The notes beneath the pieces are model-generated. The model worked only from the letters and a program-made list of their open reading frames with translations. It was not told the DNA's origin and did no database searches. A stretch of DNA of 63,110 bases, the filler included, from Octopus bimaculoides (lineage: Eukaryota), in the NCBI RefSeq assembly GCF_001194135.2. It is 4 parts of 4 records of this genome, joined end to end, with 100 filler letters (N's around TTAATTAATTAA, not from the genome) between each part and the next. Parts side by side here need not be neighbours in the genome. Positions count along the whole stretch, not along the records: positions 36,966 to 47,335 come from NC_068983.1; 3 more parts are not named here. One strand, written 5' to 3'. Positions within the stretch are counted from its first letter, which is position 1; the number at the start of each line of letters is the position of its first letter. Positions 39,758 through 46,743 of this stretch are shown piece by piece. A program made the position numbers and the translations under genes.

Positions 39758-39976
39758 GGTAGCAATGAACTCAATGAACTGTTGTACAAAATGATAAATG
39801 AGACCAGAGAAATTCATATATCGAATTCAGAAGTGAATGAGATTCTGTTTCTTCGTTTCGTTGTCAATACATATCACTCGGACATACAAGACATGCAGTA
39901 TTGCTTTAACGTTATTGGAAAATTAGCTGAGGAAGTGTTGAGTTCTTGTGAGAAAACGTCACAGAGTTTAAATTAA
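39758..39976 (+). CDS. DDC-like: Terminal coding exon of a DDC/AADC-like group II PLP-dependent decarboxylase (paralog A)
   Basis: A pyrimidine tract and cag acceptor (39755-39757) precede the phase-0 exon GSNELNELLYKMINETREIHISNSEVNEILFLRFVVNTYHSDIQDMQYCFNVIGKLAEEVLSSCEKTSQSLN*. This aligns with the last coding exon of DDC ([24 protein letters not shown]...FVLRFAIC...IKELAADVL), which also starts at GSN. No upstream exons were located in the window. Confidence 0.8.
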   Translation, partial: GSNELNELLYKMINETREIHISNSEVNEILFLRFVVNTYHSDIQDMQYCFNVIGKLAEEVLSSCEKTSQSLN

Positions 39977-41779
39977 CAGAAAATATGAAGTCATCAGTCA
40001 AGATTTAATAGTGCTGAAAAATGGCCGATATTATGATAACCGACTTAAGATTTTCCAGTATTAATTATATTTAACAAACATTTAATTGTTTTAAAAATTT
40101 ACTCTATAAATTGTTTTTAAAGTTAAATCACCTTGTGAGTAATAATTATATTAAAATATTTTGTAAGTAATATTCTAATAATGGGTTGTCTTTTAAAATT
40201 TAAGCTATACAAATATAATTTTATATTTCCATCAGCATTTTATATGTTTAGTCACATATCCTCTTAAATCGGTATGACTTTATCAAAATAATTAAAACTA
40301 TGTTTCCTCATTAATATGAAAAGAACTTTCCCGATATATACTCGAAATATTAAATAACCTATGCACAACGATACAATATCTTCGCTTTTGTTTTATTTAC
40401 TAATATCACGTTACATGTTTCGTCTAATGTCTAATGTTTCAACGACATTGCTCATAGGTATTTTAAAACAATCTGTACATTGCAATGCTTCAAGAAAAGG
40501 CTCTTTTAACAATCTTCAGTGTTTTCGTCCTTAAGAAATGTTGAGTGACCACAAAGGAAACATCGTGTTGAATCATATATATACATGTGGGTGATGATGG
40601 AGGTTTGTTTGCTTATATACGCTTATGTTTGTGATGATGAAGATGATGGTTTGCTGGTAAGCATATCAGTTAGGAAGATTGTTTTGAATGACTCGTTTGG
40701 TAACATATTTTTAGTTCGAATCTAATTAAAGGAATAACTTTCTTTCGCTTATTTCTGGTTCAGATATTGCACCATATGCCCATGTGAGCAAATAAAGATA
40801 TTACAACATGTTTCCATGTGAAGATATTGATGTTGTCATTCTTGTCACAATACGACCTCACTTCGCCTATATCCTTTATATATTGTTGCATGTTATTAAA
40901 ATACTTTTATAGACTGCTTATGACATCAACTCCACACTTTGTTTTAGTACAGAAATATATAATTCTTTTATTTAGTCCCTTTTGAATACCGAACACAAGA
41001 CTATAGCTCTTCTCTATATTTTCTTAATGTACTCTGAAATTAAGTTGTTCAATCGAGATTTAGTGACTATGAATTTTTGCTACCTTATAGATTCATGCGA
41101 GATACTTTTCTAAAAATGAAAATGGAATTAGCGAGCGGACCTTGGTTATCACTTTGGTGACTCCGTACTCGCGACTGGAGATGAACCAACCAGCTCGGAA
41201 CTTCGACAAGCATAATTTTCAACCAATGAATGAGTCCTATCAAATTAAGTTTTCTTTACTCGCAAATTACTGCTAAAAGAACTTTCTTACAAACTAACTC
41301 CAATTTATTTTGATTCAATAATACTTTGCTAAAACGCTTTTTACTACACTATCAATAGCTCGGGGATTAACTTGACACTCTTACTGTTATTGTTGTTGAT
41401 GATAAATATTATAGTAATATTTCTGATATGTTTATAATTGTGCTCCCTGGAATCTTATAATTTAATTGGTGGAAAGTAATGTACATCGTGCACCCAGTGT
41501 ATTCAGTAACATGTAACACAAGGCTCTTGCTGAAAAAATATTCGATCGTACAATAATAATAAAGAATGATCTTCTATAAAGTTATATGACTCTAAATCCA
41601 GTAACTTAAAGCTGGTGTGCAGTGCAGAAACTAATGTTGATATATTCCATATTATTTTTGTATTAATCTTATGCATAAAGAGTTCCGCATGTGTATGCAA
41701 CCCTGGAATCTACCCTACTGTAAGATAACATGTGGTAACCAAATAACAGCATAAGAACTCTGAAATCACGTTACGAGGT

Positions 41780-42400
41780 TTTAAACCAAATTATACTCAG
41801 TATATATATATTTAGTACAATGTACGTATCTATGTATGAGTTAATAGTCCATACAAAAAGGAACACTCCATTTAATATTCTTTTCCTACACTAGGCGCAA
41901 GGCTCGAAATTCCGGGGGAGAGAGCAAGTCGATTAGATCGACACCGGTACACAACTGGTACTTAATTTATCTACCTCGAAAGGATGAAAGGCAAAGTCGA
42001 CCTCGGCGTAATTTGAGCTCCGAACGTGGAGACAGACGAAATACCGTTAAGCATTTCGCCCGGCGTGTTAACGTTTCCGCCAGCTTGTCGCCTTACACAT
42101 CATTTGATATGGCAAGGCACATATGTTCAATGGTCACAGATACTGTTAGACAAGAGAAACGACTGACGGAACTTAATATATTCTTCCAGGAACAAAAAAT
42201 ATCCCAACAAATTAATTCAACTTGATGCAACAAAAGGAAAGGAAATCCTTATCTCTACTTTACGGTAAAACACTCAGGCTAGGTGTGAAAATAAAAATAC
42301 AAATATTCCATTTGTAGTCAGCCACAATCCTAGAAACCACAACGTCCTGCACGCCTGCACTCGGCCAAATGGTACCTCTCAATTCTACATCAATCACTAA
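41780..42400 (+). mobile_element. Penelope-like (Neptune-type) RT-thumb remnant interrupted by a SINE
   Basis: FKPNYTQY / HTKRNTPFN on the left of the SINE. On the right, SFDMARHICSMV...RLTEL...Q(K)YPNKLI...LR and IPFVVSHNPRN. This matches the pattern YKPTD..QYL..HTKRNIPFNLARRICTIV..RL.EL..YP..LI..IPFV.T.NP. Confidence 0.6.
41878..42094 (-). mobile_element. SINE family C
   Basis: Matches the reverse complement of aaggcg.c.agctggcggaaacgttaacacgccgggcgaaatgc...gaggtcgactttgcctttcatcctttcg. Confidence 0.85.
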
Positions 42401-42483
42401 ATCTCCAACGAATAATTTTTTTAAAAATCACAGATTCTCAGCAGTGGAAGACAACCACCCTTGAGTCACATCTATGCTTCTGC

Positions 42484-42521
<38 letters not shown>

Positions 42522-43173
42522 NNNNNNNNNNNNNNNNNNNNNNNNNNNNNNNNNNNNNNNNNNNNNNNNNNNNNNNNNNNNNNNNNNNNNNNNNNNNNNN
42601 NNNNNNNNNNNNNNNNNNNNNNNNNNNNNNNNNNNNNNNNNNNNNNNNNNNNNNNNNNNNNNNNNNNNNNNNNNNNNNNNNNNNNNNNNNNNNNNNNNNN
42701 NNNNNNNNNNNNNNNNNNNNNNNNNNNNNNNNNNNNNNNNNNNNNNNNNNNNNNNNNNNNNNNNNNNNNNNNNNNNNNNNNNNNNNNNNNNNNNNNNNNN
42801 NNNNNNNNNNNNNNNNNNNNNNNNNNNNNNNNNNNNNNNNNNNNNNNNNNNNNNNNNNNNNNNNNNNNNNNNNNNNNNNNNNNNNNNNNNNNNNNNNNNN
42901 NNNNNNNNNNNNNNNNNNNNNNNNNNNNNNNNNNNNNNNNNNNNNNNNNNNNNNNNNNNNNNNNNNNNNNNNNNNNNNNNNNNNNNNNNNNNNNNNNNNN
43001 NNNNNNNNNNNNNNNNNNNNNNNNNNNNNNNNNNNNNNNNNNNNNNNNNNNNNNNNNNNNNNNNNNNNNNNNNNNNNNNNNNNNNNNNNNNNNNNNNNNN
43101 NNNNNNNNNNNNNNNNNNNNNNNNNNNNNNNNNNNNNNNNNNNNNNNNNNNNNNNNNNNNNNNNNNNNNNNNN

Positions 43174-45725: not shown

Positions 45726-46104
45726 CAGCGTCCATCAAACTGACAGACAAGAACATCATACCCACATTGCACAACCCGAGAATTGGCAGAAAGCTTCAAC
45801 CTATCAAAATCCGTCCTTCATGAGCACCTGGTAAAACTTGGGTACACAAATCGCTACGATGTTTGGGTACCACATGAATTGAGTGAGAAGAACCTTTTGG
45901 ATCGCATTTCCATCTGTGATTCGCTTTATAAACGGAATGAAAACGCGCCTGTTTTAAAGCAAATTGTGACAGGTGATGAGAAATGGATTATCTTCCGAAA
46001 TGTTCAGAGAAAGCGATCCTGGAGTAAACGCTATGAGCCACCCTTAGGAGGGTCTTCACCCTAAAAAAGTCTTTCTTTGTGTCTGGTGGGACTGGAAAGG
46101 AATT
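45726..46104 (+). mobile_element. Mariner (DD34D) transposase fragment
   Basis: TTRELAES; WVPHEL; IVTGDEKWI; GLHPKKV.LCVWWDWKGILY. Confidence 0.9.
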
Positions 46105-46130
46105 CTGTATACATACACACATACACGTAT

Positions 46131-46363
46131 AAGGCGGCGAGCTGGCAGAAACGTTAGCACGCCGGGCGAAATGCTTAGCGGTATTTCGTCTACCGCTACG
46201 TTCTGAGTTCAAATTCCGCCGAGGTCGACTCTGCCTTTCATCCTTTCGGGGTCGATTAAATAAGTACCAGTTACGCACTGGGGTCGGTATAATCGACTTA
46301 ATCCACTTGTCTGTCCTTGTTTGTCCCCTCTGTGTGTAGCCCCTTGTGGGTAGTAAAGAAATA
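46131..46363 (+). mobile_element. SINE family C, full length
   Basis: tRNA-like head (agctggcagaaacg; gagttcaaattcc) and body ending gtagtaaagaaata. Confidence 0.85.
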
Positions 46364-46641
46364 ATACACACATACACGTATAATATGTATTTGCATCTAT
46401 ACATATCGAGCAATATTATTTTTACAATAAATTTGACTGTGTATTCACAGTAATGAGTCCCATAAACAAATGATCCGTTGTTACTCTCGATTTCTTTGGC
46501 GGTTAAAATTGTATTCGTTTTGTCATCTATTGAAGAATTTCCGAGCAAATATTTATAACATTTTTTCTGTTCCTATTTAATGAAGCTGGTATTACAAAAG
46601 AGCGAGACAATAACTGCGCGAATAAATAAAAAATTGTTTAC

Positions 46642-46743
46642 CTTCAGGCGAAAACACACAAGTGACATTAGATTCTCACCAATTAGTTCAAATCTTCCAT
46701 CCTTATCTATCAACTCCCTAAATATGTGGGCCAATTTTATATC
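46642..46743 (-). CDS. DDC-like: Penultimate coding exon (102 bp) of a DDC/AADC-like decarboxylase (paralog B)
   Basis: ttctcag acceptor and aag|gtaaac donor. The 34 codons DIKLAHIFRELIDKDGRFELIGENLMSLVCFRLK match DDC [34 protein letters not shown] in length, phase and the LVCFRLK motif. Confidence 0.9.

What the first reader, a model, noticed from the sequence alone, without database searches (positions are those of the whole stretch)
39758..46743. Tail-to-tail pair of divergent DDC/AADC-like decarboxylase genes
Seen: two homologous terminal exons on opposite strands with stop codons 3.5 kb apart. Both have the FRLK|GSN intron position, are open, and are about 52% identical (32/61 aa by hand count). 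They share TREIHI and FLRFVV where canonical DDC has IHLVPC and LRFAIC, and paralog B has D at the usual H of the H-x-x-L-[AS]-H motif. Established: group II PLP decarboxylases (DDC, HDC, TDC) make serotonin, dopamine, histamine and tyramine/octopamine, and octopus posterior salivary glands are rich in these amines. Inference: this is an old, lineage-specific inverted duplication that may have shifted substrate range, possibly a salivary or venom amine subfamily. Convergent 3' UTRs could also overlap.
Basis: partly seen in the sequence, partly recalled or inferred. Interest (0 to 1): 0.75.

Follow-up and report, generated by a model that had tools for sequence, protein, structure and literature searches.

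The report
Convergent octopus DDC-like decarboxylase paralogs
The piece holds the 3' ends of two facing, already annotated Octopus bimaculoides genes from a fast-evolving, Octopus-only offshoot of DOPA decarboxylase whose substrate pocket is altered, which makes it a fair lead for new amine chemistry but not a new kind of system.

Summary
[quoted passage not shown] I call them A (XP_014775469.1) and B (XP_014775473.1). B's second-to-last exon is at 46642-46743 (-). The terminal exons are 51% identical in protein.

The N gap lies between the two stop codons and breaks no reading frame. It does make the 3.5 kb spacing and the join an assembly estimate.

A, B and a third paralog, C, form a 100%-supported clade found only in Octopus. 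The clade is sister to the cephalopod canonical DOPA decarboxylase (DDC), lies beside it on the chromosome, and shares its 12-exon structure. It is not a tyrosine or histidine decarboxylase group.

The catalytic residues are kept. Substrate-pocket and catalytic-loop residues that are invariant from human to limpet are replaced across the whole clade. dN/dS is 0.35-0.6.

A is a gene-conversion mosaic, and only exons 1 and 12 show its true age. A seems absent at the matching site in O. sinensis and O. vulgaris. Its exon-10 splice acceptor reads AA.

A salivary or venom role and overlapping 3' UTRs remain untested.

The parts
39758..39976 (+). Terminal coding exon (exon 12) of paralog A, including the stop codon at 39974-39976. 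It encodes GSNELNELLYKMINETREIHISNSEVNEILFLRFVVNTYHSDIQDMQYCFNVIGKLAEEVLSSCEKTSQSLN.
   Evidence: Translation. Identical to the C-terminus of XP_014775469.1 and its isoforms (P0279, P0160, P0167, P0162). Exon mapped. Hits DDC 3k40 at 2.7e-5.
36966..39757 (+). 3' part of A's intron 11. The piece starts right after a 4.8 kb assembly gap. It contains (ATT)n/(AAT)n arrays, transposon-like debris, (TTAGGG)4 and a palindromic MITE-like (miniature transposon-like) element at about 39445-39680.
   Evidence: tblastn finds no AADC exon here. Window coordinate = L003 coordinate - 4857, and the gap L003 36975-41822 ends at the piece edge. Repeats.
39977..42521 (.). Sequence downstream of A's stop, up to the gap. 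It is AT-rich (33% GC), has ATTAAA at 40150 and AATAAA at 40791, and holds a SINE copy at 41926-42098.
42522..43173 (.). Assembly gap of 652 N (estimated size), flanked by (TA)n on the left and (TG)n on the right. It is intergenic and lies between the two stop codons.
   Evidence: The same gap is present in the chromosome-level record (L003 47379-48030).
43174..43481 (-). B's 3' flank or UTR, with ATTAAA on the - strand at 43288. About 250 nt of it are 90% identical to the O. sinensis B 3' flank.
43482..43736 (-). Terminal coding exon (exon 12) of paralog B, including the stop codon at 43482-43484. It encodes GSNEINEELIKSITLTREIHIGCSKIDDNVFLRFVVHAYQATIEDINYSYKLIAKLADQVLHSQPKPRTQTSKDCLKCMISIFH.
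   Evidence: Translation. Identical to the C-terminus of XP_014775473.1 (P0278) and P0165. Exon mapped.
43737..46641 (-). B's intron 11. It contains a reverse-transcriptase zinc-finger fragment (45024-45275), a mariner-like ORF that is not confirmed by Pfam, and a SINE copy at 46127-46299.
46642..46743 (-). Exon 11 of paralog B. It encodes DIKLAHIFRELIDKDGRFELIGENLMSLVCFRLK, with a phase-0 donor AAG|gtaaac.
   Evidence: Translation. Pfam PF00282 positions 343-375, E = 9.8e-5. Exon mapped.
46744..47335 (-). 3' part of B's intron 10, with a MITE-like element at about 46790-46915. The piece ends at the next assembly gap.

Best explanation
The piece is Octopus bimaculoides chromosome CM046603.1, roughly 1.188-1.198 Mb. 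It holds the 3' ends of two convergently oriented, intron-containing genes for group II pyridoxal-phosphate (PLP) dependent aromatic-L-amino-acid decarboxylases. Gene A is on the + strand (XP_014775469.1, 485 aa, 12 coding exons). Gene B is on the - strand (XP_014775473.1, 497 aa, 12 coding exons).

The exons in the window encode the C-terminal small domain. The catalytic residues are encoded upstream, outside the piece.

A, B and a third gene C (directly upstream of B, same strand) form a fast-evolving clade seen only in Octopus. The clade arose by DNA-level duplication of the neighbouring canonical DDC gene.

The paralogs have since exchanged sequence by gene conversion.

Inferred, not shown: the proteins are still PLP decarboxylases rather than aldehyde synthases, because K303, H192, D271 and Y332 are kept. 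Their substrate preference differs from DOPA/5-HTP, because the pocket and the catalytic loop are rewritten.
For: - Identity with annotated proteins and with the locus.
- Homology to solved DDC structures.
- Same 12-exon plan, with the same exon sizes, in A, B, C and canonical DDC.
- NJ tree of 42 sequences with 200 bootstraps: ABC clade 100%; (A,(B_bim,B_sin)) 100%; ABC plus cephalopod DDC 84.5%; TDC and HDC fall elsewhere.
- Physical cluster: C then B then DDC on one strand in O. sinensis and O. vulgaris, with 44.7 kb from B's stop to the DDC start. In O. bimaculoides, A faces B, with B and C on the other strand.
- Per-exon dS between A and B: 0.72 and 1.29 (exons 1, 2); 0.29 to 0 (exons 3-9); 1.02 (exon 12). 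A-C dS is 0.11-0.17 for exons 2, 3 and 10.
- The A-B tract covering exons 6-9 with their introns is 93-97% identical.
- dN/dS: A-B 0.39 (CI 0.29-0.52); B-C 0.36; B_bim-B_sin 0.62 (CI 0.41-0.96).
- Residue table: H192, D271, H302, K303, Y332, G354, R355 and R447 are kept. T69C, F77G/A, T82A/S, I101V/D, G102V, F103I, A148S/T, S149T, F309T/I, K334Q, H335C, D345N, R347T/M and L353C are changed in A, B and C.
Against: - There is no expression, protein or enzyme evidence. Activity and substrate are inference only.
- The tree is distance-based, the clade sits on a long branch, and it was built on gene-conversion mosaics.
- dS of exons 1 and 12 is near saturation.
- The O. bimaculoides region is a short-read assembly full of gaps (14 gaps in 55 kb), so single-base features and the A-B join are not verified.
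- B's in-window exons evolve at dN/dS of about 1 between species (CI 0.5-3.3), so constraint on this C-terminal part is weak.
Confidence: 0.8

Rival explanations
1. Paralog A is a decaying, non-functional copy. It keeps an open frame only because gene conversion from B and C keeps patching it. Only B (and C) are working enzymes.
For: - A's exon-10 acceptor reads AA where B, C, B_sin and DDC have AG.
- The original gene model (UniProt A0A0L8H5W6, 452 aa) skips exactly that 33-aa exon. RefSeq isoforms X1-X3 skip exon 2, exon 4 or both, and these exons carry pocket and PLP-phosphate residues.
- No A-type gene is annotated, or detected in the examined flanks, in O. sinensis or O. vulgaris.
- The few differences in the recently converted tract are 4 nonsynonymous to 1 synonymous.
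Against: - All 12 exons are open, with no frameshift or stop. The other 21 splice sites are canonical.
- In the unconverted exons 1, 2 and 12, dN/dS against B is 0.35 (CI 0.21-0.52). That would not be expected if A had drifted neutrally since the old split.
- The AA could be a base error or a polymorphism in a short-read assembly.
- The full-length 485-aa model is retained by RefSeq.
Confidence: 0.25
2. The clade is a salivary-gland or venom amine-synthesis subfamily. For example, it could be DDC-derived tyrosine decarboxylases that make tyramine and octopamine in the posterior salivary gland.
For: - Position 82 is Ala (A, C) or Ser (B). Those are the residues found in Drosophila TDC2 and TDC1, where DDCs have Thr (PMC6411801).
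- Fast protein evolution: orthologue identity is 83-87%, against 94% for canonical DDC.
- From my own knowledge: octopus posterior salivary glands are rich in tyramine, octopamine, serotonin and histamine.
Against: - No tissue expression data could be reached, and no paper links these genes to salivary glands.
- T82A and T82S mutants of Drosophila DDC did not gain tyrosine activity (PMC6411801).
- Other tissues are equally possible, such as ink gland, skin, beak or suckers, and nervous system.
Confidence: 0.15
3. The tail-to-tail arrangement is a scaffolding artefact. The two contigs on either side of the N gap would then not be neighbours, or one of them would be inverted.
For: - The join is an unsequenced gap of estimated size between two microsatellites.
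- The gap-free O. sinensis assembly shows no A exon within 10 kb downstream of B.
- Near-identical A and B segments could confuse a short-read assembler.
Against: - All 12 A exons are collinear on one strand, and all 12 B exons on the other, across many contigs of the same scaffold. A whole 35 kb gene block would have to be misplaced.
- The gap size (652) is not a placeholder value, which I read as a mate-pair estimate (my inference).
- Protein accessions from the first annotation are consecutive for DDC, A, then B/C.
- In O. sinensis the conserved B 3' flank is followed at once by (TA)n. The unique 33 nt plus (TA)n left of the gap match O. sinensis 6.1 kb downstream of B in the collinear orientation (51 nt, 94%).
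Confidence: 0.07
4. The two genes are ordinary canonical DDC, TDC or HDC orthologues that merely look divergent at the C-terminus.
For: RefSeq names all of them simply 'aromatic-L-amino-acid decarboxylase'.
Against: - A separate canonical DDC exists in O. bimaculoides, O. sinensis, O. vulgaris and Argonauta.
- A, B and C are 53-55% identical to it over the full length, the same as octopus DDC is to human DDC.
- TDC and HDC clades are separate in the tree.
Confidence: 0.02

Closest known systems
Canonical cephalopod DOPA decarboxylase / AADC (O. sinensis XP_029633174.1, O. bimaculoides XP_014775466.1, Argonauta hians P0163)
   Same: Same Pfam family (PF00282). Same 12 coding exons with the same sizes and phases. 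Same chromosome neighbourhood. Sister clade in the tree. Shared cephalopod-type motifs such as DIKLA and ELEVIVLDWLAKA.KLP. Catalytic residues K303, H192, D271 and Y332 are kept.
   Different: Only 53-55% identity. Clade-wide replacement of pocket residues T82, I101, G102 and F103. The catalytic loop is rewritten, with exon 9 only 20-30% identical. Protein change between Octopus species is roughly 2-3 times greater (13-17% of residues differ, against 6% for the canonical DDC). dN/dS is 0.35-0.6.
Insect DDC paralogs made by tandem duplication (amd / DHPAA synthase next to Ddc; PDB 6jrl)
   Same: A DDC-derived neighbour gene with altered active-site residues and, in insects, a new chemistry. It is a precedent for new function arising in a DDC tandem cluster.
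   Different: DHPAA synthases have Asn at position 192. A, B and C keep His192 and the loop Tyr, so they are predicted to be plain decarboxylases. The origin is independent (Octopus-specific clade).
Animal tyrosine decarboxylases (Drosophila TDC1/TDC2; molluscan and annelid TDC clade)
   Same: Ala or Ser at the position of DDC Thr82.
   Different: A, B and C do not group with the TDC clade. They derive from DDC. Activity on tyrosine is untested.

Membership tests
Group II PLP-dependent decarboxylases (Pfam PF00282, AADC/DDC type) | Significant match to the Pyridoxal_deC profile | tested here: met
   In the window only B's exon 11 reaches the model (positions 343-375, 21.7 bits, below the 27-bit cutoff). 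The full-length annotated proteins that end in these exons carry PF00282 (precomputed).
Group II PLP-dependent decarboxylases (Pfam PF00282, AADC/DDC type) | C-terminal small domain homologous to DDC residues about 382-478 | tested here: met
   phmmer against PDB: B's joined exons match 3k40 at 2.2e-15 and human DDC at 5e-14. A's exon matches 3k40 at 2.7e-5.
Group II PLP-dependent decarboxylases (Pfam PF00282, AADC/DDC type) | PLP-binding Lys in the (N/S)-P-H-K-W motif, plus Asp271 and His192 | tested here: met
   Alignment to human DDC, whose numbering was checked against 3rbf. K303, H302, D271 and H192 are present in A, B and C. They are encoded outside the window.
Group II PLP-dependent decarboxylases (Pfam PF00282, AADC/DDC type) | PLP-dependent decarboxylase activity | not testable with these tools
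   Needs recombinant protein.
Canonical DOPA/5-HTP decarboxylase (DDC orthologue) | One-to-one orthology with DDC of other animals | tested here: not met
   A separate canonical DDC exists. A, B and C form their own 100% clade on a long branch.
Canonical DOPA/5-HTP decarboxylase (DDC orthologue) | Conserved substrate-pocket residues T82, I101, F103 and loop residues K334, H335, R347 | tested here: not met
   T82A/S, I101V/D, F103I, K334Q, H335C and R347T/M in A, B and C. These positions are invariant in human, beetle, limpet and canonical octopus DDC.
Tyrosine decarboxylase (animal TDC clade) | Groups with the TDC clade in a phylogeny | tested here: not met
   TDCs of molluscs, annelids and arthropods form a separate clade.
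Histidine decarboxylase | Groups with HDC; Ser at position 354 | tested here: not met
   HDC served as the outgroup. A, B and C have Gly354. The role of S354 is from my own knowledge.
Aromatic aldehyde synthases (insect DHPAA synthase, plant AAS) | Asn in place of His192 (insects), or Phe in place of the loop Tyr (plants) | tested here: not met
   His192 and Tyr332 are kept in A, B and C. Criteria taken from PMC6411801.

The most novel reading that the evidence does not exclude
An Octopus-restricted, DDC-derived trio of enzymes has acquired a new substrate or product. One possibility is a second, independently evolved tyrosine (or other aromatic or non-canonical amino acid) decarboxylase that supplies the large amine pools of a peripheral organ such as the posterior salivary gland. 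Inverted-orientation gene conversion would keep the catalytic core uniform while the ends diverge.
Probability: 0.25. Interest if true: 0.65.

Novelty: new member of a known kind. Interest (0 to 1): 0.4.

Why it matters
If these enzymes are active on a different substrate, they would be an independent case of DDC-cluster neofunctionalisation, parallel to insect amd/DHPAA synthase. They would also be a genetic handle on the unusual amine chemistry of octopus peripheral organs.

There is a practical lesson for annotation. The three genes are named alike, are partly merged into single RefSeq or ENA models (B with C, and B with DDC), and are near-identical in exons 6-9. RNA-seq and single-cell studies that use 'DDC' as a monoamine marker in octopus may therefore mis-assign reads. 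Exons 1 and 12, the latter being the part in this window, are the paralog-specific regions.

Tried and rejected
- Word-indexed protein search with B's 118-aa C-terminus found only one metagenomic fragment. The exhaustive representative search was needed to reach the octopus proteins.
- The bacterial promoter/terminator scan is meaningless for this eukaryotic locus.
- Rfam and tRNA scans of the piece found nothing.
- Pfam on six transposon-like ORFs gave only one weak zf-RVT hit.
- Exact look-ups failed for P0165, P0160, P0171 and for two window ORFs. So I obtained no independent contig across the gap and no O. bimaculoides canonical-DDC DNA.
- The profile search for ABC-type fragments (a possible route to transcripts) in other species returned only canonical-type AADCs at 47% identity or less, plus one 62% canonical-like fragment.
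- Argonauta hians has no AADC-like exon within 10 kb of either side of its DDC. This is weak evidence, because in O. sinensis the B-to-DDC spacing is 45 kb.
- Seven literature searches found no paper describing this cluster or its expression.
- I rejected the idea that the MITE-like inverted repeat (39445-39537 against 46823-46915, 94%) marks the duplication boundaries. It is a dispersed element with further copies in other introns.

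
Full report
WHAT IS IN THE PIECE

The range 36966-47335 is a single contig block of Octopus bimaculoides chromosome CM046603.1 (assembly GCA_001194135.2). It is bounded by assembly gaps on both sides and holds one internal gap. Window coordinate equals L003 coordinate minus 4857.

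tblastn with human DDC, with B's peptide and with a metagenomic relative finds exactly three AADC-like exons and nothing else:
- A exon 12, 39758-39976 (+)
- B exon 12, 43482-43736 (-)
- B exon 11, 46642-46743 (-)

Translations are open, with AG acceptors before GSN, and B's exon 11 ends FRLK|gtaaac.

A and B terminal peptides are 34/67 = 51% identical (E = 8e-23). Their DNA is 70% identical over 186 nt. Both match the C-terminal small domain of solved DDC structures.

One correction: A's FRLK exon is outside the piece. It sits at L003 36819-36920, 16 bases... more exactly, immediately before a 4.8 kb gap that ends at the piece's first base.

THE GAP

The gap at 42522-43173 lies inside the 3,505 nt that separate the two stop codons. 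It is flanked by (TA)n on the left and (TG)n on the right. No reading frame crosses it.

What depends on it is the exact distance, because 652 is an estimate, and the adjacency and orientation of the two genes.

Evidence for the join:
- All 12 exons of A are collinear on one strand, and all 12 of B on the other, across many contigs of the same scaffold.
- Accessions from the first annotation run DDC, then A, then B/C.
- In the gap-free O. sinensis assembly the conserved B 3' flank (246 nt, 90%) is followed directly by (TA)n.
- The 33 unique bases plus (TA)n left of the gap match O. sinensis 6.1 kb downstream of B in the collinear orientation (51 nt, 94%).

This is supportive but not proof.

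WHOSE GENES THESE ARE

An exhaustive HMMER search with B's C-terminus gave as best hit an O. bimaculoides protein at 56% identity. Searching with that protein listed all Octopus relatives. Their sequences show the following:
- A's exon is the exact C-terminus of XP_014775469.1 (485 aa) and its isoforms.
- B's exons are the exact C-terminus of XP_014775473.1 (497 aa).
- A third paralog, C, is XP_014775474.1 (481 aa).
- The canonical DDC is a fourth gene (XP_014775466.1; O. sinensis XP_029633174.1; an Argonauta hians orthologue).

RefSeq treats B and C as isoforms of one gene. An O. sinensis isoform is a C/B chimera. An O. vulgaris model fuses B with DDC.

GENE ORDER

In O. bimaculoides, A (+) spans 1,155,936-1,190,768. 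It faces B (-) at 1,194,274-1,223,863, with C (-) directly upstream of B and an OATP transporter gene beyond C.

In O. sinensis and O. vulgaris the order is C, then B, then DDC on one strand. In O. sinensis the distance from B's stop to the DDC start is 44.7 kb.

PHYLOGENY AND GENE STRUCTURE

I rebuilt the coding sequences of A, B, C, B_sinensis and DDC_sinensis from the genomic loci. All have 12 coding exons of matching sizes: 204/201, 114, 120, 135, 144, 67, 95, 68, 91-97, 99, 102, and the terminal exon. These are therefore DNA-level duplicates and not retrocopies.

An NJ tree (42 AADC, TDC and HDC proteins, 476 columns, 200 bootstraps) gives:
- A+B+C at 100%
- (A,(B_bim,B_sin)) at 100%
- ABC plus the cephalopod DDCs at 84.5%, nested among molluscan AADCs
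- TDC and HDC clades elsewhere

No ABC-type protein was seen outside Octopus in three database searches. The only Argonauta hit was its canonical DDC, and its 10 kb flanks hold no AADC exon.

A IS A MOSAIC

Per-exon Nei-Gojobori dS between A and B:

| Exon | A-B dS |
|---|---|
| 1 | 0.72 |
| 2 | 1.29 |
| 3 | 0.29 |
| 4 | 0.22 |
| 5 | 0.18 |
| 6 | 0.06 |
| 7 | 0 |
| 8 | 0 |
| 9 | 0 |
| 10 | 0.37 |
| 11 | 0.16 |
| 12 | 1.02 |

A is closest to C in exons 2, 3 and 10 (dS 0.11-0.17). For comparison, B_bimaculoides against B_sinensis is 0.11 overall.

The A-B tract over exons 6-9 is 93-97% identical including the introns.

The simplest reading is repeated gene conversion among three paralogs, one of them in inverted orientation. 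Exons 1 and 12 escaped, and they record a split several times older than the divergence of the two Octopus species.

SELECTION

dN/dS estimates with bootstrap confidence intervals:

| Comparison | dN/dS | 95% CI |
|---|---|---|
| A-B, whole gene | 0.39 | 0.29-0.52 |
| A-B, exons 1, 2 and 12 | 0.35 | 0.21-0.52 |
| A-B, exon 12 alone | 0.43 | 0.19-0.88 |
| B-C, whole gene | 0.36 | 0.28-0.47 |
| B_bim-B_sin, whole gene | 0.62 | 0.41-0.96 |
| B_bim-B_sin, the two exons in the window | about 1.1 | 0.5-3.3 |

Orthologue protein identity is 87% for B and 83% for C, against 94% for canonical DDC. The 94% is a low estimate, because the O. bimaculoides DDC model is partly wrong.

So the clade is under purifying selection, but weakly, and it evolves fast.

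ACTIVE SITE

Numbering follows human DDC, which I verified against PDB 3rbf.

A, B and C keep W71, F80, P81, H192, D271, H302, K303, Y332, G354, R355 and R447.

They replace residues that are invariant in human, beetle, limpet and canonical octopus DDC: T69C, F77G/A, T82A/S, I101V/D, G102V, F103I, A148S/T, S149T, F309T/I, K334Q, H335C, D345N, R347T/M and L353C. A and B also have N300S.

According to the review PMC6411801:
- T82 binds the catechol hydroxyl of carbidopa in pig DDC.
- Drosophila TDC1 and TDC2 carry Ser and Ala at that position.
- T82A raises the Km for DOPA and 5-HTP but does not create tyrosine activity.
- His192 against Asn, and the loop Tyr against Phe, separate decarboxylases from aldehyde synthases.

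Hence my inference: these are still decarboxylases, with an altered substrate preference. This is inference only.

IS A ALIVE, AND IS IT SHARED?

A's frame is open through all 12 exons. Its exon-10 acceptor, however, reads ...ttttaa|ACT, where all relatives have AG. The original gene model skips exactly this exon, and RefSeq isoforms skip exon 2, exon 4 or both.

No A-type protein is annotated in O. sinensis or O. vulgaris. There is no A exon in the 10 kb downstream of B_sinensis or in the 10 kb upstream of DDC_sinensis.

A 1.5 kb block lying 3.5-5 kb upstream of A in O. bimaculoides matches O. sinensis 8.4-9.8 kb downstream of B, in the orientation expected for synteny. This suggests that the roughly 40 kb A segment is missing there.

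The same block is 74% similar over 1 kb to C's last intron. That hints that an ancestral inverted duplication copied part of C together with B.

Because A's unconverted exons are much older than the species split, loss in the O. sinensis/vulgaris lineage is more likely than gain in O. bimaculoides. The middle 24.7 kb of the O. sinensis interval was not examined.

WHAT REMAINS OPEN

- Tissue of expression, and with it the salivary or venom idea.
- Enzyme activity.
- 3' UTR extent. The nearest poly(A) hexamers are ATTAAA at 40150 for A and at 43288 (-) for B. These would give short UTRs that do not overlap, but such hexamers are common in 33% GC sequence.
- The true sequence across the gap.

No paper in the searchable library describes this cluster.

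VERDICT

This is a real and correctly located finding. The genes are already annotated, under a generic name, and belong to a very well known enzyme family. What is new is their status as an Octopus-restricted, fast-evolving, gene-converting offshoot of DDC with a remodelled pocket. Interest is moderate.

Noticed in passing
L003 31069-31070 (O. bimaculoides gene A, outside the window): The splice acceptor of A's exon 10 reads AA, where B, C, B_sinensis and DDC have AG. The UniProt model A0A0L8H5W6 skips exactly this 33-aa exon. It could be a real defect, a polymorphism or a base error.
   Followed up: partly
L003 10001-44833 against L002 10001-39590 and L005 10375-35441: Gene A is a mosaic. 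Exons 4-9 and 11 are B-like, and exons 6-9 with their introns are 93-97% identical to B. Exons 2, 3 and 10 are C-like. Exons 1 and 12 are equidistant from both. This points to gene conversion between inverted and tandem paralogs.
   Followed up: yes
P0158 (O. sinensis), P0281 (O. vulgaris), RefSeq isoforms X1-X6 of O. bimaculoides: Public gene models merge neighbouring paralogs. B and C are treated as isoforms of one gene, one isoform is a C/B chimera, and a 900-aa model fuses B with the canonical DDC across 127 kb.
   Followed up: partly
L001 2698-2944 (O. sinensis, terminal exon of C): The C-type terminal exon aligns in two frames, with a shift of one base at about 2824. This is either a frameshift or an indel error in the long-read assembly.
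   Followed up: no
L003 5045-6605; L001 about 60850-62200; L002 4035-5023: A block upstream of A matches sequence 8.4-9.8 kb downstream of B in O. sinensis. It also matches C's last intron at 74% over 1 kb. This hints that the inverted duplication once included part of C, and that O. sinensis later lost A.
   Followed up: partly
window 39445-39680 and 46790-46915: A palindromic MITE-like element lies in A's intron 11 and in B's intron 10. Further copies are in A's intron 10, in a C intron, and at the orthologous B site in O. sinensis. It is absent from the two DDC loci.
   Followed up: partly
window 41926-42098 and 46127-46299: Two inverted copies (86%) of a high-copy SINE. There are more than 20 copies in the roughly 320 kb of octopus loci fetched. 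ARAGORN finds no tRNA in them.
   Followed up: partly
window 37091-37250 and 37300-37410: Long (ATT/GTT)n and (AAC/AAT)n arrays face each other only about 60-100 nt apart. Together they form a potential hairpin of more than 100 nt in A's intron 11.
   Followed up: no
window 38617-38640: A short interstitial run of the telomere-type repeat (TTAGGG)4, inside transposon-like debris.
   Followed up: no
L005 1-2703: An OATP/SLCO-type organic-anion transporter gene (763 aa) lies directly upstream of C on the same strand.
   Followed up: no
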